Assembly (NCBI GenBank): GCA_000320545.1
Contig: ADNK01001741.1
Coordinates: 1-52,537, forward strand
DNA: 52,537 nt
DNA from: Bigelowiella natans CCMP2755
Lineage: Eukaryota; Protista; Cercozoa
Direction: 5' to 3'
Shown here in pieces: positions 1 to 21,818 of this stretch. The translations under genes were made by a program, and so were the position numbers. Positions within the stretch are counted from its first letter, which is position 1. Each line of letters opens with the position of its first letter. The notes below the pieces were generated by a model that ran no database searches, was not told the DNA's origin, and saw only the letters and a list, made by a program, of their open reading frames with translations.

Positions 1-36
1 ATGACGGGAGTTTAACCTCCCGTGACCTTGCCTTTT

Positions 37-112
37 GTGTGAGTGGTTTTTGCCTTTGAACCACTCGTAGTTCGCGAACTACGAGTGGTTCAAAGGCAAA
101 AACCACTCACAC
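37..112. repeat. Perfect 76-bp spacer-less palindrome (centre TTCG|CGAA), each arm containing a nested GAGTGGTT...AACCACTC inverted repeat
   Basis: Base-by-base pairing of position i with 149-i holds from 37 to 112; a small ACGGGAG/CTCCCGT hairpin lies at 4-23. Confidence 0.95.
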
Positions 113-119
113 CAACACG

Positions 120-1640
120 CCATCTGAACCCATGTGACATCGTGTGGAAACCCCCATGCCACGCACGCAACGTGCACACCTTTGCATGCCAACGCGCACC
201 CACACAATCAGGCCCACGTGTGCCCACAAACTTGCACACAAAAGAAATCATGATAAATGCTGAACACACGCATGCCACCCAATGTGTGCATGACTTGGAA
301 AGCCTGTCGCACTGCCCAAGGCAAATGCGAAAGCATGCATGCATTGCACATGCAAACGCATGTGTCCAACGTGCTGCTGCTGAAACTGAACCAGAACAAA
401 ACTGCATGCCTGGCATGCTGCCTGGTGCAAGCACGCGCTTGGTGGTCATGGCCGACCACACCAGAAACACGTGGGAATGCGCGTTCCGCGAAGCTAGCTG
501 GGAATGCGCATCCCCGCATTCCACATCTTGGACTGAGATGGACCCGTCATTTTCCGTGGTGCGGCATTGATGTTTCGCAAGGGGTGAGCAAGCTAGCAAG
601 CATGGAAGTTGCCAGTTCAGAAATTTTGATGACCCTAGCTGTTCCATTGGCCAACTGACTTCGTTCACCCAACTTTGGGTCAAGTGGATGAGTGGGGCAC
701 GCTTTTGTCGATGCTTTCAGCCACGCTGTTGCGCGCAGCGTGCTTGGAATGCAAGTGGTTGATGGACGTGTGGCTGCGGTCAGCTGAAGAATGGTTTCAT
801 CATTTCAATCAAGTTTGACAGCGTGCACCAGTGCACTGGTGCATGATGCCACAATTGATTGATTGACAGACCTTCCCAGAGGCCTTTCCCAGTTTCCATG
901 GTCTGATCTTGCACACGCACGGAGTTTTCCTGTCGCGACCTCCGACAGTTTGGGGGCGAGTGAGACAATCCCTGCCTCATTCTGGGCAACTTCGCAATGC
1001 ATCACCTTGCGTGCCATGCCCGTTCAGCGCCGGACTAGCGGATGCCATGCGGATGCGACAAAACTGGACGCGCTCATTCACTCTGGCATTGCCTGCCGCG
1101 CCAAGATGACAGCACTTGCGTCTGAACGCACAATGGACGTGCAAACGTTCCAACAGCGTGTGAACAAACAATCTGTGTTGCACACAGCGCTGCATGCATG
1201 CTTTGCGCTTTGGGCGGGCAATTGAATCTGTTCGATCACTTCATTGCACCCGCTAGCCCGTCTCATCACACAATGGACCAACAAGAAGTACGCTGCATGC
1301 ATGAAACTTGTGGATGCAATGAGTGAGTGATCAGATCTTTCAATGGTCATCCCAAAGTGGCTGCCATGGCGCTGCGCATGACATGCATCATTCATTCAGA
1401 CACCGTAGGAACACTCAGACGCGCAAAGTCCATCACGGTGATCGACAAGCAACAACGTGCGCTGTTCCACCACCCCCAGCTGCAAACATCATGCACGTTT
1501 CACGCAGCCAGATGCATTTTCACATCACAGGATGAAAAATGAAAAACTGCAATGATTTCATCACTGCATCCTCCTCACGTGCAAAATGTGCGCATTGTTG
1601 TGTGCACGATGTGTTTGCTGTGACAACACATGTTTTTCAG
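120..1640. other. TpA-depleted, TG/CA-rich island downstream of the caspase-like gene
   Basis: By my count only 11 TpA in 1-1640 (about 100 expected at even base composition), 7 of them in TAG; ORFs here are His/Cys/Ala-rich with almost no Tyr. Confidence 0.85.
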
Positions 1641-1643
1641 GAA

Positions 1644-4457
1644 CTAAAAGTGAAGAGAATGTTTCCGTGGCCTTCCTTCAGCGTCATCAGAGATGAATGT
1701 GGAAGGCTGTTTCACTGTGGCAGAGTGCTTGTGACTTCTCAGGTACGTACTTTCATACCAGTCCGTGAAGAGGGTTCCATCGATGCAAATCTCAATGCCA
1801 TTGCCCGTGTGCGGAATTTCAACAGCAGGGTCTTGGTTTTGCATTCTCATCACTTTCCCAGCTTCTGTGACGAGATCGAAGAATCTTAGACAATGTCTCT
1901 TTTTCCTCTGACTTTTGAAGACTGACAACAATGATTCGGTGAAGAGTCCGTTCTGATTGTCTCCATTGTAGGCTGCATGGCCTTGACATGTGCACAGCAC
2001 ACACAAGTCAAAAACATCCTTCCACCCCAAGAATCTTATGTGTTGCTTGAGATCAATTCACCTGGCTGACAAGCGTAGAGTGTCATGCATCCTTTTAACT
2101 CTTCTTTTGCAATCTTCAAACCACTTCTCGTCAATGAACGATTCTCACTTGGCACTGAGCGTAGCAGTTCTGACACAATGGCAGATCATGGTTGTGCTGT
2201 TTGAGAGGTGGTTGATGATTTATGGATCGAAATACCTGAAGCATTAACACGACAACAATCTAGCAACAGAATCTTCACGTTCGCTTTATCCAAGCCTTGA
2301 ATTATGCTTCTTGTACTTAGTTCACTCCTTTCCAACTCCCTGAAACAAGAAAATGGAGTCATTTGAATGATGATCGAAAAGGCAATACACTCCACACCTG
2401 ACATGCTTGTAGTCATTATCAATACCCAGTAGATAGTTATCGAACGCGGTCTGATTCTTATTTGGTATTTGGACACCATGGCCGGCGAAAAATACAACTG
2501 CCAAAGATTCGCCTTTGTGGTGTAGGAGAGCATCTTCAAATTCATTGAGAGCTTTCTTCATACCTTCGCTTGAAAGGTTTTCATGATAGAAGACCTTGTA
2601 GCCGTACTCAGATCCAAACTTTTCCTCAATGGCTTTTGCATCGTTGATAGGATTTGATCCCAATCGGCCATAACTGTAGTTTCCATTACCGATGATCAAT
2701 GCAAACTTGTGTGTAATGACAGGCTTCGGCTTCTTGCTCGGCCTCACCACGGTGGCCTGTTTTGTTTCCTTGATCGCCTTTTCGAACCTTCTACGGTGCG
2801 GTTTTTTCGGAAAGTAATTCTCAATTTCGTCACTCTCCTAAGATGTTACAACAATAGAAATAATGCTAAATATTGTATCCAGAACTAACCTACATACTCA
2901 GACAATGAATGTTACCATGTCGATTAAGTCCTGGAGGAGCTCATAACCATCGCAACGCAACGTTTGGGAGTATTTAGAGAGATGGACTCTTTTTAGAAAC
3001 TGTTCAAATTCGTCATTTTCCGGCCCCCTGCTTTCCTTATCTTGCTTTGTCAATTCGGATTTTATCTGTAAAAAGAGCAGCATATTTGTGATTCTGATTA
3101 GTTGCAGTTTTTGAAGGTAACGAAATAATGACCTTCTTACTGAGACTAGAAGTGGGAGGATCTTCAACCGTAGGTGCTTTTGATCTCTTTCGATTAAACT
3201 TTGGTGGTATTGGCTTAGAAGCAGCAGCTTTCTTGGCATCCTGATCCACTTCCATCTCGTTTTCTTTCCCAGTCTGTGCTATTTTAGACTTTCAAAAAGG
3301 AACAAATTATTGTACCTCTGACATGAACACGGACAGAGGTCGTCTACCTTTTCAGCTTCGTCTTTTGTAGCATCCAATACATTCTTCTCCTCTTTAACGA
3401 TAACTTTCTCATCCTTCACCTTTTTTTTCAGAGCACTACCCTTTTGTACAGACTGCTTTTGATCATCATCGTCATCTTGATGTGTAGTGTGATCTCCACT
3501 GGCTTGATCGGGCTCGCCATCCTCCTTAACGTACTTCTCCAAGAATGCAGGCAAGATTTCTTTCACTATGTTCCTACAGGTTGCATTGAAGGTTTTAACG
3601 AACATGAAGGGTGGAGTGGAGTGGAGTGATGTGAAATTTAGATTATCATCAAATGCCTGAATTCTTTCGTTGACTTCAGGTTGTTCTCTTTGCACAGAAG
3701 ATTCCTTATCTGCAGAACATCACATCATTTCTCAGGGGAATGCGACCTACAGGTCTATGAATAATCACATACTCCTTTTTTTGTGAATTCGTTTTTTTCC
3801 ATAAGCTCGTCTCTGCGATTCTTGAATATATCCTCCATCTTCTCTTCAATCAATGCTCTCAGCTCCTCGCCAGTGGGCTGCCCCATAACTTCTTCCCGAG
3901 TAGTCTTTGTTAGATTGGACTTCAGAAAAAAAAAAACTCCGTGTTATGCTTGTACATTATTATCATAAGAGATCTTTCTCCACCTCCTTGCTCTCAGCAT
4001 ATTTGTGATTCTGATTAGTTGCAGTTTCTGAAGGTAACGTAATAATGACCTTCTTACTGAGACTAGAAGTGGGAGGATCTTCAACTGTAGGTGCTTTCGC
4101 TCTCTTTCGATTAGACTTTGGTGGCATTGACTTTGTTGTAAGTACGACCTCCTTTTTAGAGTTTTGCTTGAATGAACACTTGGGCCTTGTTTTCCCCATC
4201 GGTTCGTCTTTGTCATCGGAAGAATCCAATTCCATTGGTGCACATTTAGACTGTCGGATCAAACATTGATGGTCTTAGATTTGCATTGAAAATCGACGGT
4301 TACAACGATTCTTGAAGCAACATATAATAATATCTAACACCATAGCACGATGACTTATTTAGATTCAGACATGCACCTTTCCTTGGGAAGAAGATGCTGC
4401 ATTATCCAAAATCATTTGTCCAAGTTCTCCTTTCTTCTTTCCAGAGTATCCCTTAAT
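1644..4457 (-). CDS. Multi-exon SAM-domain + caspase-like (peptidase C14) protein, C-terminal part of the ankyrin locus
   Basis: Spliced reading gives SAM-like FEQFLKRVHLSKYSQTLRCDGYELLQDLIDM...PKKPHRRRFEKAI, then KFALIIGNGNY..NPINDAKAI..VFFAGHG (catalytic His) ..KILLLDCCR (catalytic Cys) ..GCMTLYACQPG/HAAYNGDNQNGLFTESLL; short GT-AG introns. The 5' end is truncated or rearranged at 4457. Confidence 0.88.
3078..3210. repeat. Internal duplication (~130 bp) of 3996-4125 encoding PPK(F/S)NRKR(S/A)KAPTVEDPPTSSLSKKVII(S/T)LPS(K/E)TATNQNHKYA
   Basis: Near-identical DNA and peptide in ORFs 3037..3255 and 3963..4262. Confidence 0.9.
4203..4457. repeat. ~255-bp direct duplication of 7107-7360 (exon end + intron + exon start)
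   Basis: Direct alignment by eye, roughly 90% identical; similarity ends abruptly mid-exon at both ends. Confidence 0.9.
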
Positions 4458-4740
4458 ACAAATACCAAGTAACACAAGAAAACAAACGAAGAAACTTAAG
4501 CAGTCTTTTCGATTCGGAAAAATATCATTAATGTAATGCTGTGTTATTTACGAGTGAATGTGGGAGTCTCGATCAAAATTTATTATCCCCGAATTCATAT
4601 GCATTTAAACAGCTACATTTGCGTATACTTGCAACTGCTCCGACGAGCAAAATAATCATTTTATAAAAATTTCTTCAATACTCCATGTGGAGAACATCTA
4701 CCAAATTATATTGAATTTAAATACCAAATACGTGAATACT

Positions 4741-4782
<42 letters not shown>

Positions 4783-4931
4783 TTCCTATAATATTCGCAT
4801 GCTGCTGAATGCAATGTAAAAATATAAATATGAATTGTTAATTATATCTCCCAAAAACATAGATGCGTACCATTGAAGCATATGATATAAATCTCTATGT
4901 TGATTAAGATAAATGTATCACTCATACACAC

Positions 4932-4969
<38 letters not shown>

Positions 4970-5195
4970 GACACATGTGTGTGTGTATTAACATCACCGT
5001 CACACCAGCTTATTCAACAGAAACCACAAAAATTCGAAAAATATATTCTAACAAAATATGAATTTTTGAAAATTCTGCTGTCTACAGAAAGCAGGATTTT
5101 TAGAAAAAACTTCTGTTCCCTTTTCAACCTCTGCTAATCTCAAATTCCGGTTCTAACTAATTATGTTTTTTTAGAATTCGTCAAATACGCATACA

Positions 5196-5230
<35 letters not shown>

Positions 5231-5455
5231 CGTAAATATGTATTTGCACAAGTTATGCGGGTGTGAGTCTAAACAGAACAAATACGATGATTCAAACATA
5301 AATAACTTTGTAGAGCTTAGATACATTAGGAGAAGGATATAGAGAAAGATAGTGCTTGTGTGTGTGCTTGTGTTTGTGTTTGTGTGGTTATGAGAAAAAT
5401 AATGTGCTTATGAAACGGCTACTTCTAAGCCTTAAACGGTTCTATTCGGGCCTAC

Positions 5456-5563
5456 CTGCTTCTGTGCGCATTTCAACTCCTCTTGTCTAACGAATCACGA
5501 TGTGATCATTTACACACACACACACACACAGACACACACACACACACACACACAAACACATAA

Positions 5564-5599
<36 letters not shown>

Positions 5600-6871
5600 G
5601 TATTATATCCAGACATGCATGTGTGATTGAGTGCGCGTCACAAAAATAAAGTAACATAAACGAAATGTCTTTTTCGTCTTGTCCAACTTCTTGCCTGGCA
5701 TTTCCCACAGCTTCTTGCCTGGCCTTCTTCTCAACCTCATCACTAATTTTCTGAACCTCTTCATCATTGCGGAGAAAACGAACGATATCGTTATGAGCGT
5801 TTTTGTTTGCCCAGTACAATGCGGTGTCGCCTAGTGCAAAAAATTGAACAAACGATTGCGTGGCAAAACAACAGCAGTGTCAACCACAATCAACTAGCCA
5901 ACAAATCAAGCCAAAAACATCAAAATTTTGCAACCACAAAACGCTCAAACAAACTGCTAGCAATCCGAAATAACATTGTGTATTACTTCTGCTACAACTA
6001 CATCTACTACCTCTACTACTCAAAACTATTACTAATACCAATATCACTACTGCTACCAACTACAATTACCATCACCCACCCAAAACTAAAACTAATGCCT
6101 AAATGCTAGCAGTACTGCAGCTGCTACCTACCGTTATTGTCCTTTGCCTCGATGTTTGCCTTCATACCAACCAGGTACTTGACGGTCTCAAATTGACCAT
6201 TATAAGAACCCGAAATCAACGGCGTATCACCTGGTGGTATTCGATACTATGTTAGACGCAAAAACAAAAATGACACATGTATGCAATATCAACAACCATC
6301 CTCAAACCAACATCTTATTAATTTTTGTAAAGCTAATATTACCATCTCTACTAATATCAATGCTCACTTTATCGTCCCTGCTACTCATTGCTCAATACTG
6401 TTACAACTACTACTCGTCATACTCACTACTCAAAACTATTACTAATGCTACTATCACTACTGCTACCAACTACAATTACCATCACCCACCCAACATTGCA
6501 AATACTGCCTAAAGCTAGCAATACTGCAGCTGCTACCTACCGTGTTTGTTCTTCGCCTCGATGTTTGCCTTCATACCAACCAGGTTCTTGACGATCTCCA
6601 AATGGCCATGATAAGATCCCAAAGTCAACGGCGTATCACCTGGTGGTATTCGATCCCATTATAGATGCAAAACTAATCTCAATATCACTACTGCTGCCAA
6701 CAACAATAACCAACATCCACCCAACAATGCAACTAATGCCTATGTACTAGCAATACTGCAGCTGCTACCTACCGTTATTGTCCTTTGCCTCGATGTTTGC
6801 CTTCATACCAACCAGGGACTTGACGGTCTCCAAATGGCCATTATAAGATGCCGAAATCAACTGCGTATCCC
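5456..6871 (-). CDS. Second ankyrin module: three 99-nt ankyrin exons (6773-6871, 6541-6639, 6132-6230), capping exon B from 5830 (GDTALYWANKNAHNDIVRFLRNDEEVQK...), coiled-coil-like tail; possibly a partial gene or pseudogene
   Basis: Exons are flanked by cag/gtagg and translate GDTQLISASYNGHLETVKSLVGMKANIEAKDNN, GDTPLTLGSYHGHLEIVKNLVGMKANIEAKNKH and GDTPLISGSYNGQFETVKYLVGMKANIEAKDNN. No start exon of its own was seen. Confidence 0.75.
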
Positions 6872-9800
6872 CTGGTGGTATTCGATCCCATTTTAGACGC
6901 AAAAACAAAAATGACACATGTATGCAGTATCAACAACCATCCCCAAACGAACTTCTAGTTAATATTTGTTAAACTAATATTACTACCTCTACTAATATCA
7001 ATGCTCAGTGTATCAGTCCCTGCTACTAAGTACTCAATACTGATACAACTACTACCCCTCTTTTTAACTACTCAAAACTATTACTAATGCTACTATCACT
7101 ACTGCTTTCGTCTTCATCATCGGAGGAATCCGACTCCATTGATGCACAGTCAGACTGTCAGATCAAACATTGATGGTCTTAGATTTGCATTGAAAATCGA
7201 TGGTTACAACGATTCTTGAAGCAAGATATATTGATATGTAACACCCAGCACGATGACTTATTTAGATTCAGACATGCACCTTTCCTGGGGAAGAAGATGC
7301 TGCTTTATCAAAAATCATTTGTCCAAGTTCTCCCTTCTTCTTTCTAGAGTATCCCTTAATCTTATGTTTACTGCAGCAATCATTCAGGGAAGGAACCGTT
7401 ACCGCACGCATTGCCTCTTTCTTCAAAGCCTGCACCAATTCATCTCTTTTCTCAATCATGTGAAAGGAGAGATCTCGAAATCGTTTATTAGCAAAGTCTT
7501 TGATCTCAGCAATACTTCCTTTGGAGCACAACCTTGCAAAAGTCCAAAATACTTCGCTCGAAAACGCTTGGGAAGTGTTGGTTTTTTTGGTTTTTTTGTT
7601 TTCGGCATTCATCTTTGCCGAAGCTATCTTTTTAGATGCGATCTTTTTGACACGAAGATACTGCATTATACTCTCATGACCACAATTTTCTGCCACGTCT
7701 ATTGGCGTTTGACCTGGGAGACGAACCAAAATGCAACAAACAAACAGAAACACTCATCACCACAACCATCCTTCGTACTACCAATAAACTAATATTGCTA
7801 CCTCTAATAATATCAATACTCAGTTTACCAGTCCCTGCTACTCACTACTCAATAAAGATACAACTACTACTCCTCTGATGCGATTCACTACTCAAAACTA
7901 TCACTAATACCAATATCACTACTGCTACCGACAACAATTACAATCACCGACCCAACACTGCACTGCCTAAACTCTAGCATGCTACCTACCGTCATTGTCC
8001 TTAGCCTCGATGTTTGCCTTCATACCAACCAGGTATTTGACGATCCTCCATTGGCCATTCCTAGATCCCAAATATAAAGGCGTCCGACCTGGTGTATGCG
8101 ATCCCATTTAGACACAAAAACAAAAATTACACATGTATTCATTATCAACAACCATCCTCAAACCAACATCGAATTGTTTTTTGTAAAGCTAATATTACTA
8201 CCTCTACTAATATCAGTGCTCAATGTACCAGTCCCTGCTACTCACTACCCATTACTGATACAACTACTACTCTCACTCACTACTCACACCTATAAGCAAT
8301 ACGGATATCGCTACTGTTGCTAACAACAGTAACCGACATCCCTCCCAACACTGCAACTACTGCCTGATGTGCTAGCAATGCTGCTGCTGCCTAACTACCG
8401 TTATGGTCTGATCCTCGATGTTTGCCTTCATACCAACCAGGTACTTGACGATCTCCAAATGGCCATTGTAAGATCCCGAAATCAACGCAGTCCAACCTGG
8501 TGGTATACGATCCCATTTTTGACGCATAAACAGAAATGACGCATGTATGCAATATCAACTACCATCGTTAAACCAAAATCGAATTAATTTTTGTAAAAGC
8601 AACATTACTACCTCTACTCATAGCAATGCTAAGTGCACCAGTCCCTGCTACTCACTACTTAATACTGATACAACTACTACTCCTGTTACTCACTACTCAA
8701 AACTATTACTAATACCAATATCACTACTGCTACCAACAACAATTACCATCACCCACCCAACACTGCAACTACTGCCTAAACGCTAGCAATACTGCAGCTG
8801 CTACCTACCGTTCATGTCCTTCGCCTCGATGTTTGCCTTCATACCAACCAGGTACTTGACAATCTCCAATTGGCCATTATAAGATCCCAAAATCAACGGC
8901 GTATTACCTGGTGGTATTCGATCCCATTTTAGACGCAAGAATAACAATGACACATGTATGCAATATCAACAACCATCCACACACCTACATCGAATTAATT
9001 GTTGTAAAGCTAATATTACTACCTCTACTAATATCACATGCCAAAGTGTACCAGTCCCTACTACTCACTACTCAATACTGATACAACTACTACTCCTCTT
9101 ACTAACTACTCAATGCTGTTATTAATACCAATATCACTACTGCTACCCACAACAATTACTATTACTCACCCAACATTGCAACTACTGCCTAAACGCTAGC
9201 AATGCTGCAGCTGCTATCTACCGTATTTGTTATTCGCCTCGATGTTTGCCTTCATACCAACCAGGTACTTGACGATCTCCAAATGGCCATTACAAGATCC
9301 CAAAGTCAACGGCGCATTACCTGGTGGTATTCGATCCCGTTTTAGCCGCAAAATGTCAATGACGCATGTATGCAATATCAACTACCATCGTTAAACCAAC
9401 ATCGAATTGTTTTTTGTAAAGCTAATATTACTACCTCTACTAATATCAATGCTAAGTGTACCATTCCCTGCTACTCACTACCCAATACTAACACAACTAC
9501 TACTCCTCTTACTCACTACTCAAACCTGTTACGAATACCAATATCGCTACTGCTGCCAACAACAATAACCAACATCCACCCAACACTGCAACTGCTGCCT
9601 GAACGCTAGCAATACTGCAGTAGCTAACTACCGTTTTTGTTCTTCGCCTCGATGTTTGCCTTCATACCAACCAGGTACTTGACGATCTCCAAATGGCTAT
9701 TCGAAGAACCCGAAATCAACGCCGTCCAACCTGGTGGTACACGATCCCATTTTTGACGCATGAACAGAAATGACACATGTATGCAATATATTCAACCATC

Positions 9801-10415
9801 CTCAAACCAAAATCGAATTAATTTTTGTAAAACCAATATTAATCTATCTACTCATAGCATGCTACTCACTACTCAATGCTGATACAACTACTACTCCTCT
9901 TACTCACTGTTCAAAACTATTACTGATACCAGTATCACTACTGCTACCGGCAACAATTACCAACATCCACCCAATACTGCAACTGCTGCCTGAACGCTAG
10001 CAATACTTCAGCTGTTACCCACCGTTATTGTCCTTCGCCTCGATGTTTGCCTTCATACCAATCAAGTACTTGACGGTCTCTAATTGTCCATCATGAGATC
10101 CCGAAATCAACGGCGTCCGACCTGGTGGTATGCGATCCCATGTCAGACGCAAAAACAGCAATGACACATGCACGCAACATCAACAACCATCCACACACCT
10201 ACATCTAACTGATGTTTGTAAAACCAATATCAATGCATCTACTCATGTCACATGCCAAGTGTACCAGTCCCTGCTACTCACTACTCAACACTGATACAAC
10301 TACTACTCCTCTTACTCACTACTCAAACCCATTGCTAATACCAATATCACTACTGCTGCCAACAACAATTACCATCACCCACCCAACACTACAACTACTG
10401 TCTAAATGCTAGCAA
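5960..10415. repeat. Tandem array of ~410-bp intron+ankyrin-exon cassettes (9 units in two blocks)
   Basis: Exon starts at 6132, 6541, 6773, 7990, 8399, 8809, 9222, 9632, 10023 (spacing mostly 391-413; one 232). The 24-mer CCTCGATGTTTGCCTTCATACCAA is identical in all nine and the introns are homologous. Confidence 0.95.
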
Positions 10416-10568
10416 TGAACAATCTTAAATGCTTCTGATGGGAATGCTACTTACGACTGCTGCTTACTCACCCTGCTTGTTCCTCGCCTCAATATTTGCC
10501 TTTTCCTCTATTAAACGTTTCAAAAGAGGAAGCCCATTTGGGTCCACTGCGGCGTCGAAGATGTCCAT
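7068..10568 (-). CDS. Ankyrin-repeat protein: start exon 10568-10472, six single-repeat exons, capping exon A 7713-7280 with a HeH/SAP-like motif, then a truncated exon from 7154
   Basis: ATG at 10568 gives MDIFDAAVDPNGLPLLKRLIEEKANIEARNKQG|gtgagt. Repeat exons: 10023-10121, 9632-9730, 9222-9320, 8809-8907, 8399-8496 (98 nt), 7990-8088, consensus GxTPLxxGSxxGHLEIVKYLVGMKANIEAK(D/N)xx. Cap GQTPIDVAENCGHESIMQYLR is followed by VTVPSLNDCCSKHKIKGYSRKKKGELGQMIF. Confidence 0.88.
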
Positions 10569-15760: not shown

Positions 15761-16777
15761 ATGAAGTTTGGGAAGATCCTTCGCGAAAATAGCAAGGAAG
15801 GATGGTTGTACTTAGATTACGATAACCTTAAGAAAATCATCAAGGATGGAGACTCATCTTCAAAGAGTTTTAAGAAGTTACTCTTGACTGACATTGTACA
15901 CGTCAATCAATTCTTTGAGAAGGCGAAGATGAAAATCGTTGACGAGGCCAGCAAGGACAAGAATTATCCTGAATTTTCTAAGCTAAAGGAACTTCACCAA
16001 TATGCTGTCTTGAACTACCTGGCTGTATTGAAAATTCTTAAAAAGCATGACAAGCACTACTTTCCGGCTATAAGGGAAGAGGTTCTAGAGGGGTTCATGC
16101 AAATGCCATTATATAAAGCCGTGAATTCACCCATACTATTCCAAAGCCTGGAAAAATCGGGATCTCTTCCCACGGGCCCCGACTGTCCGATCTGCCTTGA
16201 GCCTTCCATTACCCCTGTTACTCTAGAATGTGGTCATCAGTTTTGCTGGACATGTCTGTGGAACGGGGATATGGAGAATCACGTTGCTTGCCCGTTGTGC
16301 CGAAAATCACAAACTCTGAACCCTTCAGAAATCAACATCAACGACATTCTCGGGAAATTTTCAAAGAAGTATTTTCCCCGTTCCGTGGAAAAGAAGGAGC
16401 CCATGCCGGAAGGGAGCAGGGATTCTATGACTAAAGCTAACAATGAATCATTCCTTGCGGTTTCAAACGATATGCAAAAGATAACAAACGATATGCAAGA
16501 TATAAGTCTAGATGTCCGCACGAGGGAATCCAAAATCAAGATTGATTACAATCCACGAAAGTCGCGCAAGCCTAATCATGTTGGATCGCTTAATGAGCTG
16601 CGATATGAACTACACAAGGATCTATGTGCAAGGACAATGCTGGAAACGAGTATGGTTCCTGTAAAACAAGAAGTTCGTTCAGTCCGATCAATGACATGGA
16701 CGGCCCCTTCCTCACCATTAATGTCCACATTCAGTGAACAAGAGGATGACGACTGTATATTCGACCTAGAAATGTAA
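15761..16777 (+). CDS. SPX-RING E3 ubiquitin ligase (NLA/BAH1-like), single exon
   Basis: SPX motifs MKFGK..YLDYDNLKKII and LNYLAVLKILKKHDK; C3HC4 RING CPICLEP..ECGHQFCWTC..CPLCR. Confidence 0.92.
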   Translation: MKFGKILRENSKEGWLYLDYDNLKKIIKDGDSSSKSFKKLLLTDIVHVNQFFEKAKMKIVDEASKDKNYPEFSKLKELHQYAVLNYLAVLKILKKHDKHYFPAIREEVLEGFMQMPLYKAVNSPILFQSLEKSGSLPTGPDCPICLEPSITPVTLECGHQFCWTCLWNGDMENHVACPLCRKSQTLNPSEININDILGKFSKKYFPRSVEKKEPMPEGSRDSMTKANNESFLAVSNDMQKITNDMQDISLDVRTRESKIKIDYNPRKSRKPNHVGSLNELRYELHKDLCARTMLETSMVPVKQEVRSVRSMTWTAPSSPLMSTFSEQEDDDCIFDLEM

Positions 16778-19796: not shown

Positions 19797-21247
19797 ATAG
19801 TTTGCAGCATCCTGACTACGAACTGCCTCATGTGCTCACACAGTCATCACGATGTTGTCATCACATGCGCTTTGAGGCCTTTCCGGCCCCACTTGTCGAG
19901 AAGGCCAACCACCAGGCTCTGGCCAAACCAATCGTATCAAAACACGCACACTCAATAGTAGCTATTGTAATAATATTACCATCATTTTCACCGCCGCCAT
20001 CACCATCCCCGTCATCATCATCATCATGATCATCATAATCATAATTATCATAATCATCACAATCATCATCATCAAAACCAGCATCGAAGTCATCATCAGA
20101 ATGATCCCATTCACTGAAATCACTGCGATCGATCATGCGCTGGTTTGTCACCTGCGAAACGGCTGATCCTGTCTGTGTGCTTAATGCACTTGCCTGGTGA
20201 ATTGAAGCAAACATCCACATCGATTCCAACGACGACGCAAAACGAGCAAGGAGCATATCAAACATATACTCTCTTCCCCCCCCCATACTTTGTATTGAGA
20301 TTACTTTGAAAGAAAATCTGATAGAGCCATCTCCACGTCTTCCCTCCCTCCCTCCCTCCCTCCTCCCCCCCCCCCCCCCCCCCCCTTCTTACTACTTTTG
20401 TCATATGAACAACTAAATCTTTGGGCGCCGTAAACTGAGAAAATAACGAGGAAAGGGGGGGAAGGGGAGAGGGCGCTCTATAATTCTCATCGGAAAGAAA
20501 ACCAGCAATACATCTATCTACTATCAACTACATAATCGAGGGCAAAAAAATTAAAAGTTTCTTTAGAAGAATAAGTTAAAGGCGGTGGACGTTTCGCCGT
20601 TTAACGTCAAACAACGCACAGGCTCTGCGACAGCATGATGCTCGAGACCGAGATAATGACCCAAAATCAGCGCATCAAAACTTCACTAGGAACTTCGGTC
20701 ATCATGGGGGGAGGAAACGCTTCTTGATGCCGAAAACTAGCTTCATCACGATCAATGCTATCATATCTGAACACGCGGTCACTCTCACCCATCCCGTTCT
20801 AAGGCCAGGAGCGAGGAACTTGCTCACGGTGTCAATCCTTCCGCATCACACACCAAACAAGAAGCAGCAATACACCGCAGCCAAGGGTGACATATCAAAG
20901 GAAGTTTCAGCACCATTGCGTCGTATGCATATGCGCCGAGAGATATATGATTAGCAGGACAATCATTTTTCCCCCCTCGCAAAACTAGAAGAGAGCTATG
21001 TGGACTCTATCAGCGTTTTGGAGGAAAATAGTAGCAAGTATCATCTGTATACACATCGCTCTTGTGACGAGGCAAAGCGAAACATAGGGCGAAGCGAATT
21101 GCAAAGGCCGAATTCTGTGGTGATTGTTGTACATACAGAACAACGGCCTGGTGAGATGGCCACTGACCTCATAGCCCTGCCTTGTGTATCGATGCTCTGA
21201 AAACCACCGAACCGTAGTCCTGCGAGTTGCAATCAAGTAGGACACCG

Positions 21248-21286
<39 letters not shown>

Positions 21287-21343
21287 GCATGATGCGTTTT
21301 ATGCGTAATGGTGGCAGGGAAAGAGAGACAAAGAGAGAAAGAG

Positions 21344-21382
<39 letters not shown>

Positions 21383-21818
21383 GCACATTACATCTTGTAC
21401 ACTATCGCAAAAATACATACTCGTATCTACACACACACATATATGCACCCACACGCACACACGGCGCAATTAGCACCTGGAATGTCCGTAGATTTGACAT
21501 CGTGATTGTACCTAACACACATCAACGACGCACACCACCATAAGCTCAGGGCAGAATCTTCTCTAGAACCCGAAATATACACTCTCCCAAGAGCTACTAC
21601 AGCAAAGCGCTCGTTCCAGTAAAAACAAAGGCCCCAATGGCTCTTGGCAGTATTTATGCGGCGAGGCAAAGGTAGGTGAAGGCAAATCCCTCCATTTTCC
21701 CAAGGTCTCTTCCATAGGGTACTGAAATGCGTGCTGTTTGTTCTTCTTCGCAATGGGTGGTATAACCAATGATGGCTTATCATGATCATGATCATCATCA
21801 TCATCATCACCATCATCA

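What the first reader, a model, noticed from the sequence alone, without database searches (positions are those of the whole stretch)
5830..10568. One-exon-one-ankyrin cassette array with DARPin-like hypervariable positions: candidate exon-shuffled receptor
Seen: nine ~410-bp cassettes, each a homologous intron plus a 99-nt phase-1/phase-1 exon encoding exactly one 33-aa ankyrin repeat, so any unit can be added, deleted, skipped or swapped without changing frame. The core (KYLVGMKANIEA) is near-invariant even at synonymous sites, with a 24-nt stretch identical in all nine. Variation clusters at G-x (R/W/N/D), TPL-xx (IS/TL/YL/IL), S-xx-G (YN/YH/RN/CN/SN/HD) and the beta-turn (DNN/NKH/DND/DMN/NKY/NKN). 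Known: most of these are the concave-face positions randomised in designed ankyrin repeat proteins. Repeat-per-exon shuffling is described for Ectocarpus LRR-ROCO/NB-ARC-TPR genes, and concerted repeat evolution for fungal HET-E/NLR WD40 arrays. Inference: a recombination- or splicing-diversified binding surface, i.e. an innate-immune-like receptor in a protist alga.
Basis: partly seen in the sequence, partly recalled or inferred. Interest (0 to 1): 0.9.

Follow-up and report, generated by a model that had tools for sequence, protein, structure and literature searches.

The report
Hypervariable ankyrin exon-cassette array, caspase-linked
In the alga Bigelowiella natans, a gene builds its ankyrin binding domain from copied exon-plus-intron units whose predicted binding-face residues change faster than silent DNA. 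This copy is spliced to a caspase-like protease, like fast-evolving immune sensors of fungi and brown algae, but one unit is broken and no immune role or splicing-based shuffling is shown.

Summary
The array is real, on the minus strand. It has nine one-repeat ankyrin exons with phase-1 borders, homologous introns and a shared 24-nt core. The fifth exon is 98 nt, so it shifts the frame. One intron is 133 nt. The array is split 6+3 by two unrelated exons.

RNA contigs splice both halves into one transcript. A JGI transcript contig, probably from another strain, carries the second half on into a SAM-like plus caspase-like (Peptidase_C14) region. Without the 98-nt exon the window has one 985-aa reading frame.

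The locus is a chimera. Paralog C891 keeps the simpler form: six ankyrin units, linker, caspase. The window gained a 2.9-kb piece of another family member.

At least 14 loci carry this 410-bp cassette, with 2 to 9 units each. Introns are homogenised within loci. In 19 independent cassette pairs, replacement change at the positions randomised in designed ankyrin binders is 0.33. Silent exon change is 0.14 and intron change 0.08.

I read this as germline diversification by unequal crossing-over, gene conversion and positive selection. Nothing shows exon skipping or an immune function.

This scan has already reported the same family on other DNA of this genome.

The parts
10472..10568 (-). Exon 1: start codon plus N-terminal ankyrin cap half-repeat; ends in phase 1 at G|GTGAGT
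   Evidence: The loose end at 10122 in run X1 continues with exon-1 sequence.
10023..10121 (-). Ankyrin cassette exon A1 (99 nt, phase 1/1)
9632..9730 (-). Ankyrin cassette exon A2 (99 nt)
9222..9320 (-). Ankyrin cassette exon A3 (99 nt)
8809..8907 (-). Ankyrin cassette exon A4 (99 nt)
   Evidence: A4-to-A5 joint seen in RNA contigs.
8399..8496 (-). Ankyrin cassette exon A5: 98 nt, with a 1-nt loss in a degenerate 3' end. Inclusion shifts the frame and gives a stop in A6 near 8022.
   Evidence: Its 5' end is spliced to A4 in run X1.
7990..8088 (-). Ankyrin cassette exon A6 (99 nt)
   Evidence: A6-to-cap1 joint in three runs.
7280..7713 (-). Cap1 exon: C-terminal ankyrin cap, basic linker and a weak HeH/SAP-like motif; donor AAG|GTGCAT
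   Evidence: RNA contig 7280-7711 with 0 differences and joints on both sides. Rho_N E=0.0033, below threshold. 75% identical to paralog C891 in a translated (out-of-frame) comparison.
7103..7154 (-). Mini exon (acidic, contains an ATG). Its donor lies at the breakpoint where cassette-intron sequence begins.
   Evidence: Joints 7280/7154 and 7102/6870; frame check
6773..6871 (-). Ankyrin cassette exon A7 (99 nt), first unit of the inserted second module
6541..6639 (-). Ankyrin cassette exon A8 (99 nt), preceded by a 133-nt deletion form of the cassette intron
   Evidence: Joint 6771/6637.
6132..6230 (-). Ankyrin cassette exon A9 (99 nt)
5695..5830 (-). Cap2 exon (second C-terminal cap plus charged coil). 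In the fused form it ends at a GC donor; unspliced contigs run on downstream.
   Evidence: Contig 5714-5829 joined to an ankyrin exon. Transcript L044. Homologous to the C-caps of sister genes.
5456..5486 (-). 31-nt micro exon linking cap2 to the caspase part
   Evidence: L044 mapping and AG/GT borders
4377..4451 (-). Exon e3: the duplicated copy of the end of the cap1 exon
   Evidence: Joint 4377/4250 in three runs; L044; duplication
4050..4250 (-). Exon E2: acidic and basic linker
   Evidence: joint; L044 99% identical
2916..3065 (-). First exon of a SAM-like region (weak match)
   Evidence: L044 100% identical. SAM_2 E=0.04-0.08 in P0010 and P0001, below threshold.
1644..2837 (-). Four exons (2398-2837, 2236-2339, 2062-2169, 1644-1981) encoding a caspase-like Peptidase_C14 domain with His (AGHG) and Cys (DCCR) motifs
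   Evidence: Pfam E=2.8e-31 on P0010
7107..7360 (.). Upstream copy of a 255-bp duplication; the partner copy is at 4203-4457 (90-96% identical). Together they flank the 2.9-kb inserted second ankyrin module.
   Evidence: The single-copy arrangement is kept in paralog C891.
5831..10022 (-). Span holding the cassette introns, homologous to one another. Six are 292-314 nt and one is a 133-nt deletion form; partial copies of 301, 276 and 231 nt flank the caps.

Best explanation
The stretch is the ankyrin part of one long minus-strand gene of Bigelowiella natans, running from 10568 to about 1644.

The repeat domain is built from exon-plus-intron cassettes. Each exon is 99 nt with phase 1 on both sides. 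Unequal crossing-over between the roughly 410-bp units therefore adds or removes exactly one repeat.

The gene belongs to a family of at least 14 loci. In this family gene conversion and recent duplication keep the introns and the structural core alike. Selection keeps about eight codons on the predicted concave binding face different.

This copy is a chimera. The ancestral gene had six ankyrin units, a linker, a SAM-like region and a caspase-like protease. It took up a 2.9-kb piece of another family member: three units, a second cap and a coil.

Shown here: the cassette anatomy, the splicing, the family, the homogenised introns, and the excess of replacement change at binding positions.

Inferred: the ankyrin face binds a fast-changing partner and thereby controls the protease, as a conflict or non-self sensor would.

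The fifth unit's frameshift means the full protein is made only if that exon is skipped or the assembly is wrong there. Otherwise the first module is decaying.
For: Anatomy and splicing:
- Nine cassette exons with conserved splice sites.
- RNA joints A4-A5, A6-cap1, cap1-mini, mini-A7, A7-A8 and ankyrin-cap2.
- JGI transcript L044 links an ankyrin exon to cap2, the micro exon, e3, E2, the SAM-like exon and the caspase exons.
- The window has one continuous 985-aa frame over 19 exons.

Origin as a chimera:
- Paralog C891 has six units, cap1, a SAM-like region and a caspase, without the second module.
- A 255-bp duplication flanks the insert.

Family and evolution:
- 61 cassettes in 14 loci, with 2-9 units per locus.
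- Intron divergence is 0.095 within loci against 0.180 between loci, and as low as 0.013 in C891.
- In 19 independent pairs, replacement change at hypervariable codons is 0.355 and at the a-priori DARPin set 0.332. Silent exon change is 0.140, intron change 0.083 and framework replacement change 0.037. The binding-face value exceeds the silent value in 17 of 19 pairs.
- Four-gamete pairs number 13 of 21.
- L044's ankyrin exon is 92% identical to A9 and has no exact copy in this genome, while the downstream exons are 99-100% identical.
Against: - Exon A5 is 98 nt and is spliced to A4 in RNA contigs, so the standard mRNA stops at codon 220.
- Window cassettes carry about twice the framework deviations of sister arrays (1.89 against 0.85, P=0.0016), which suggests relaxed constraint here.
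- The fused ankyrin-caspase transcript rests on one assembled contig from another sample, plus a 30-nt overhang in run X6. Unspliced contigs over 4377-4717 and 5235-5484 also exist.
- Within the window alone the test has little power. Hypervariable codons show 18 replacement changes against 1 silent change, and framework codons 14 against 12 (Fisher P=0.003).
- No NTPase domain, ligand or phenotype is known.
- Raw RNA reads were few: 17 in run X21.
Confidence: 0.7

Rival explanations
1. Splicing-based diversification. The cell skips or chooses cassette exons to make many receptor isoforms from one gene. Skipping of the 98-nt unit is one such choice.
For: - All intact cassette exons are symmetric (phase 1/1, 99 nt), so any skip keeps the frame.
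- Only a transcript lacking A5 has the long open frame.
- High exon skipping was once reported for B. natans (cited in PMC6142364).
Against: - Every canonical joint recovered links neighbouring exons. The one apparent skip (5829 to 6772) is explained by the identical 3' ends of A7 and A9.
- A5 is seen spliced to A4.
- Later data sets gave much lower exon-skipping rates for this alga (PMC6142364).
- Logan contigs break at shared 31-mers and cannot resolve isoforms.
Confidence: 0.1
2. Neutral repeat turnover. This is an ordinary ankyrin scaffold gene that grew by tandem duplication. Surface positions are merely unconstrained, and there is no adaptive diversification or receptor role.
For: - An earlier follow-up on a sister array with a 412-bp unit (s1-742865) reached this view.
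- Most sister genes end only in a charged coil.
- Within the window alone the excess over neutral is modest.
Against: - Replacement change at a-priori binding positions is 2.4 times the silent change and 4 times the intron change, in 17 of 19 independent pairs. Relaxed constraint alone cannot push the ratio above 1.
- Cassette pairs whose introns differ by 2.4% still differ at 31% of replacement sites in the hypervariable codons.
Confidence: 0.12
3. Decaying chimera. This particular locus is a transcribed pseudogene, or only its second half still works. It was left over from a rearrangement that disrupted an ankyrin-caspase gene.
For: - Frameshift in A5, with a stop in A6.
- A5's 3' end is degenerate.
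- Twice as many framework substitutions as in sister arrays.
- Introns are 11-22% diverged, so homogenisation has stopped here.
- Expression in raw reads is low.
Against: - The other 19 exons keep one open frame of 985 aa with intact splice sites.
- The caspase exons are 99-100% identical between two sources.
- A 638-aa frame starts at the mini-exon ATG.
- The single missing base could be an assembly error.
Confidence: 0.3

Closest known systems
Fungal NLR repeat domains with high internal conservation (HET-E/HNWD WD40; ANK and TPR NLRs of Podospora; Dyrka 2014 PMC4986451, Chevanne 2010 PMC2873952)
   Same: - Near-identical tandem repeats.
- Unit number varies.
- Concerted evolution within and between loci.
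- Positive selection at positions on the concave binding face of ANK repeats.
   Different: - Here every repeat is its own exon, and the intron is part of the copied unit.
- No NACHT or NB-ARC domain was seen.
- The attached domains are a caspase-like protease or, possibly, a kinase.
- The window's own repeats are only 72% identical in protein, below the 85% used to define the fungal class.
[quoted passage not shown]
   Same: - One repeat per symmetric exon of fixed length.
- Inactivated exons occur.
- Variable repeat number.
- Positive selection is claimed on exposed residues, and an algal candidate receptor is proposed.
   Different: - The repeat type is ANK (99 nt, phase 1) rather than LRR (72 nt) or TPR.
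- The window has no cassette on the opposite strand and none hidden inside introns.
- No ROCO or NB-ARC domain.
- The introns themselves are homogenised copies.
Designed ankyrin repeat proteins and consensus ANK designs (PDB 4qfv, 4o60, 1n0r, 4gpm)
   Same: The exon aligns in register with the designs, E=3.5e-16 to 6e-11. Hypervariable positions 2, 10, 11, 32 and 33 correspond to five of the six randomised DARPin positions.
   Different: - Positions 6 and 7 (after TPL) and 31 also vary here.
- The sixth DARPin position (our 30) is conserved Lys.
- The DARPin numbering is from memory.
Vertebrate ankyrin genes (ANK1-3), where most 33-residue repeats are encoded by single 99-nt exons (from memory, not checked here)
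   Same: One 99-nt exon per ankyrin repeat.
   Different: As I recall, the vertebrate repeats and introns are old and diverged. They show no homogenised introns, no hypervariable face and no multi-locus family of recent cassettes.

Membership tests
Ankyrin repeat (Pfam Ank/Ank_2) | 33-residue repeats matching the ANK profile (TPL...G-H-LE-VK-L helix pair plus beta-turn) | tested here: met
   Pfam Ank_4 1.8e-13, Ank_2 1.8e-12 and Ank 1.1e-10 on the L044 product. One window exon matches designed ANK proteins at 3.5e-16.
Repeat-per-exon shuffled receptor genes (Ectocarpus type) | Each repeat is encoded by one symmetric exon of fixed length | tested here: met
   Eight exons of 99 nt and one of 98 nt, all with phase-1 borders.
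Repeat-per-exon shuffled receptor genes (Ectocarpus type) | Intact or inactivated repeat exons inside introns or on the non-coding strand | tested here: not met
   No core match on the plus strand and none outside the nine exons. The only inactivated unit is A5, which sits in series.
Repeat-per-exon shuffled receptor genes (Ectocarpus type) | ROCO or NB-ARC signalling domain in the same gene | tested here: not met
   Only Peptidase_C14, with weak SAM_2 and Rho_N, was found in the pieces searched. The gene's other exons and ORFs gave no Pfam hit.
Fungal NLR-type highly conserved repeats | Repeat-number variation and concerted evolution within and between loci | tested here: met
   2-9 units in 14 loci. 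Intron divergence 0.095 within loci against 0.180 between. Variation between strains could not be tested.
Fungal NLR-type highly conserved repeats | Positive selection at binding-face codons | tested here: met
   At family level, replacement change 0.332 against silent change 0.140, in 17 of 19 independent pairs. These are simple counting methods; no recombination-aware codon model was run.
Fungal NLR-type highly conserved repeats | Central NACHT or NB-ARC NTPase | tested here: not met
   No such domain in the pieces searched with Pfam.
Fungal NLR-type highly conserved repeats | At least 85% protein identity between repeats | tested here: not met
   The window mean is 72%, range 61-85%. Some sister arrays reach 88-97%.
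Caspase-like peptidase (Peptidase_C14) | C14 domain with a catalytic His-Cys pair, in the same transcript as the array | tested here: met
   Pfam 2.8e-31. AGHG and DCCR motifs are in the sequence. The link to the array comes from L044 and the open frame. Activity was not tested.
Somatic or splicing diversity generator | Several isoforms differing in cassette content | tested here: inconclusive
   All canonical joints fit neighbour-to-neighbour splicing. Contigs cannot resolve isoforms, and raw reads were too few.

The most novel reading that the evidence does not exclude
Bigelowiella has an innate-immune-like sensor family that lacks an NLR-type NTPase. Interchangeable, positively selected ankyrin cassette arrays are coupled to different effectors: a caspase-like protease here and in C891, and possibly kinases elsewhere. 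Productive isoforms are chosen by skipping cassettes such as the frameshifted fifth unit. The family would detect viruses or other non-self and trigger protease-driven cell death.
Probability: 0.2. Interest if true: 0.85.

Novelty: new variant of a known kind. Interest (0 to 1): 0.58.

Why it matters
I know of no innate-immune receptor system described in Rhizaria, and my paper searches found no account of this family.

A multi-locus family of fast-evolving ankyrin binding faces is a concrete candidate. At two loci it is tied to a caspase-like protease.

The family also shows exon-plus-intron cassettes acting as the unit of duplication. It includes a module insertion caught in the act, which kept the reading frame by using a new donor inside former intron sequence.

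Giant viruses that infect chlorarachniophytes are now in culture (bioRxiv 10.1101/2025.11.19.688996; I saw only the title and abstract). Infection experiments are therefore possible.

Tried and rejected
- **Metagenome scan:** the 24-nt core gave no match in JGI metagenome contigs.
- **Cap1 and cap2 relatives:** protein searches gave only JGI models P0001 and P0008 and one partial transcript product, P0020. No strain series could be built.
- **P0001:** it has no exact record in the contig collection.
- **Sister loci:** What lies downstream is therefore known for only some of them.
- **Core constraint:** I considered that the invariant core reflects a special silent-site constraint and rejected it. 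Its silent divergence equals that of the introns.
- **Apparent exon skip:** the joint 5829/6772 is explained by identical exon ends, so I rejected it as a skip.
- **Non-canonical joints:** those with extra letters between the two sides come from paralog contigs laid at 95% likeness, and I ignored them.
- **Mobile intron:** I saw no copy of the cassette intron outside ankyrin arrays in the listed matches; 95 matches were not listed.
- **Joined model:** the spliced protein model was not sent to any search or fold tool. Exons were searched by reference, and frames were checked only inside scripts.
Full report
**1. The observation**

The region is coded on the minus strand. A 19-nt core motif occurs nine times there and never on the plus strand. 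Each copy sits in an exon with a CACCAG|G acceptor and an ACG|GTAG donor. Each exon carries one 33-residue ankyrin repeat and has phase 1 on both sides.

Tandem Repeats Finder reports a 410-bp period with 81% matches over 7785-10417. A 24-nt stretch is identical in all nine exons.

- Exon A5 (8399-8496) is 98 nt. One base is missing in a degenerate 3' end.
- The intron between A7 and A8 is 133 nt, a deletion form of the usual intron of about 310 nt.
- A6 and A7 are 1118 nt apart, and that gap holds two unrelated exons.

**2. The gene**

The organism is Bigelowiella natans. Paralogous proteins carry JGI Bigna1 names, and earlier scan notes say the same.

I laid RNA contigs of three studies on 4190-10189. 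They gave canonical minus-strand joints for:
- A4 to A5
- A6 to the cap1 exon (7280-7713)
- cap1 to a 52-nt mini exon (7103-7154)
- the mini exon to A7
- A7 to A8
- an ankyrin exon to the cap2 exon at 5830

Both ankyrin modules are therefore on one transcript. The joint laid as 5829/6772 is ambiguous, because A7 and A9 end identically for at least 37 nt.

A JGI transcript contig (L044, 1838 nt) continues the path. It runs from an ankyrin exon through cap2 (ending at a GC donor at 5695), a 31-nt micro exon (5456-5486), 4377-4451 and 4050-4250. It then reaches a SAM-like exon (2916-3065) and four exons of a Peptidase_C14 domain.

In the window these 19 exons, with A5 left out, form one open frame of 985 residues. 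With A5 included the frame stops at codon 220, inside A6. From the ATG in the mini exon there is a 638-residue frame.

Unspliced contigs over 4377-4717 and 5235-5484 also exist. Shorter ankyrin-only and caspase-only messages are therefore likely as well. Raw reads were too few (17) to say more.

The joined model was used only inside scripts to check frames. It was sent to no search or fold tool.

**3. A chimeric locus**

Following a first-reader note (s1-749455), I confirmed that 7107-7360 is repeated at 4203-4457 with 90-96% identity.

Paralog contig C891 has, in one compact run, an N-cap, six cassettes, cap1, the acidic exon, a SAM-like region and a caspase. It has no second ankyrin module. 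JGI model Bigna1/81648 joins its cap1 exon to the caspase.

The window's second module (A7-A9, cap2, charged coil, microsatellites) resembles the 3' half of ordinary family members such as the one on C2926.

So a 2.9-kb piece of another member was inserted between the duplicated copies. The new mini-exon donor lies exactly where cassette-intron sequence begins. It happens to give phase 1, which keeps the frame.

**4. The family**

One cassette used as a DNA query gave 245 matches in this genome. Full exon-plus-intron units occur on 13 other contigs. I extracted 61 cassettes from 14 loci, with 2 to 9 units per locus.

The 24-nt core has 48 exact matches and 120 with up to two mismatches. The reversed control has none.

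Intron divergence averages 0.095 within loci and 0.180 between them, and falls to 0.013 in C891. The window's own introns differ by 0.11-0.22, so this array is among the least homogenised.

**5. Selection**

Across the 61 cassettes, entropy is high at repeat positions 2, 6, 7, 10, 11 and 31-33 and near zero in helix 2. Alignment to designed ankyrin proteins fixes the register. Positions 2, 10, 11, 32 and 33 match five of the six DARPin-randomised sites; that numbering is from memory.

I took 19 independent nearest-neighbour cassette pairs:

| Class of site | Divergence |
|---|---|
| Replacement, eight variable codons | 0.355 |
| Replacement, a-priori DARPin set | 0.332 |
| Silent, whole exon | 0.140 |
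| Intron | 0.083 |
| Replacement, framework codons | 0.037 |

The binding-face value exceeds the silent value in 17 of 19 pairs. Pairs whose introns differ by only 2.4% still differ at 31% of replacement sites in the variable codons.

Silent divergence is 0.061 in the core codons, which is like the introns. It is 0.172 in the rest of the exon. This fits conversion homogenising the core and introns, while selection keeps the variable codons and their close neighbours apart.

All four gametes occur in 13 of 21 informative site pairs within 84 nt of the window's exons.

Within the window alone the signal is weaker. Variable codons show 18 replacement changes against 1 silent change, and framework codons 14 against 12 (Fisher P=0.003). 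Window cassettes also carry twice the framework deviations of sister arrays (1.89 against 0.85, P=0.0016).

**6. Between strains**

L044 is 99-100% identical to the window in the SAM-like and caspase exons and 97% identical in cap2. Its ankyrin exon is only 92% identical to A9, and the protein differences include positions 2 and 10. No exact copy of that exon exists anywhere in this genome.

This hints at allelic cassette change. It rests on one assembled contig, though, and transcriptome assemblers can join paralogs at shared words.

**7. Effectors elsewhere**

- Three sister arrays (C2926, C858, C2949) have a protein-kinase ORF a few kb downstream on the same strand. I did not show that array and kinase share a transcript.
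- Other sister genes end in a charged coil.
- One partial transcript product (P0020) shows a cap and coil followed directly by a new N-cap. Two-module proteins therefore recur in the family.
- SAM-like plus caspase paralogs without detected cassettes exist on at least six other contigs.

**8. Comparison and verdict**

The behaviour matches fungal NLR repeat domains (PMC4986451) and the exon-per-repeat receptor candidates of Ectocarpus (PMC3341825). It is not a member of either group:
- No NACHT, NB-ARC or ROCO domain was found in the pieces searched.
- There are no reversed or intronic spare exons.

My paper searches found no description of this family in B. natans. Reports of exon skipping in this alga conflict (PMC6142364).

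The scan has already reported the family from other windows (s1-724764, s1-738969, s1-724863, s1-742865, s1-724766). New here are:
- the count of loci carrying the 410-bp cassette
- the caspase link backed by transcripts
- the module insertion
- the broken fifth unit

My reading is germline diversification of a binding face, with a possible sensor-protease function. Splicing-based shuffling and an immune role are untested.

Noticed in passing
G000 contigs C970:14184-14506, C1827:13843-14042, C2038:1529-2054: Ankyrin cassettes of the same family lie head to tail with a period of about 99 nt, that is, without introns. These may be processed copies or an older intron-free form.
   Followed up: no
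L035 (C2926) 5806-7824; C858 about 4599-5084; C2949 about 21052-21543: A large ORF with a protein-kinase domain (Pkinase 8e-13) lies a few kb downstream of three sister ankyrin arrays on the same strand. It may be part of the same genes.
   Followed up: partly
window 3078-3216 and 3995-4133: A second internal duplication (139 nt, 94% identical, 917 bp apart) in the linker before the SAM-like exon. In transcript L044 the donor of the first copy is spliced to the acceptor of the second, so the sequence between them is an intron.
   Followed up: partly
window 5689-5695: The cap2 exon uses a GC-AG intron (CAG|GCAAGA) in the fused transcript form.
   Followed up: partly
window 4740-5610: Long (TA)n and (AC)n microsatellites lie inside the 1-kb intron or alternative 3' end after cap2. 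The sister gene on C2926 has a (TA)n run at the matching place, and a plain ORF reads straight through it.
   Followed up: no
window 6000-10000 (cassette introns): The cassette introns are strongly C-poor on the coding strand (GC skew -0.34 to -0.40 on the plus strand). By eye they are rich in GTA/GTAG motifs that look like spare donor sites.
   Followed up: no
L044 383-586 against window 4252-4050: The JGI transcript contig has one extra base relative to the window here, which splits its product into two called ORFs (174 and 372 aa). The window's frame is continuous at this point.
   Followed up: yes
G000 contigs C1331, C3197, C2601, C2135, C1432, C1688: Further SAM-like plus caspase paralogs. 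C1331 is JGI model Bigna1/90136, which starts after the ankyrin cap. No cassettes were seen on these contigs in the listed matches.
   Followed up: partly
window 15761-16777 (+): An intron-free 338-aa ORF that by eye looks like an SPX-type N-terminus followed by a RING-finger-like Cys/His motif. Not searched.
   Followed up: no
window 1-1640: A first-reader note (s1-749419) says this stretch is nearly devoid of TpA. I did not examine it.
   Followed up: no
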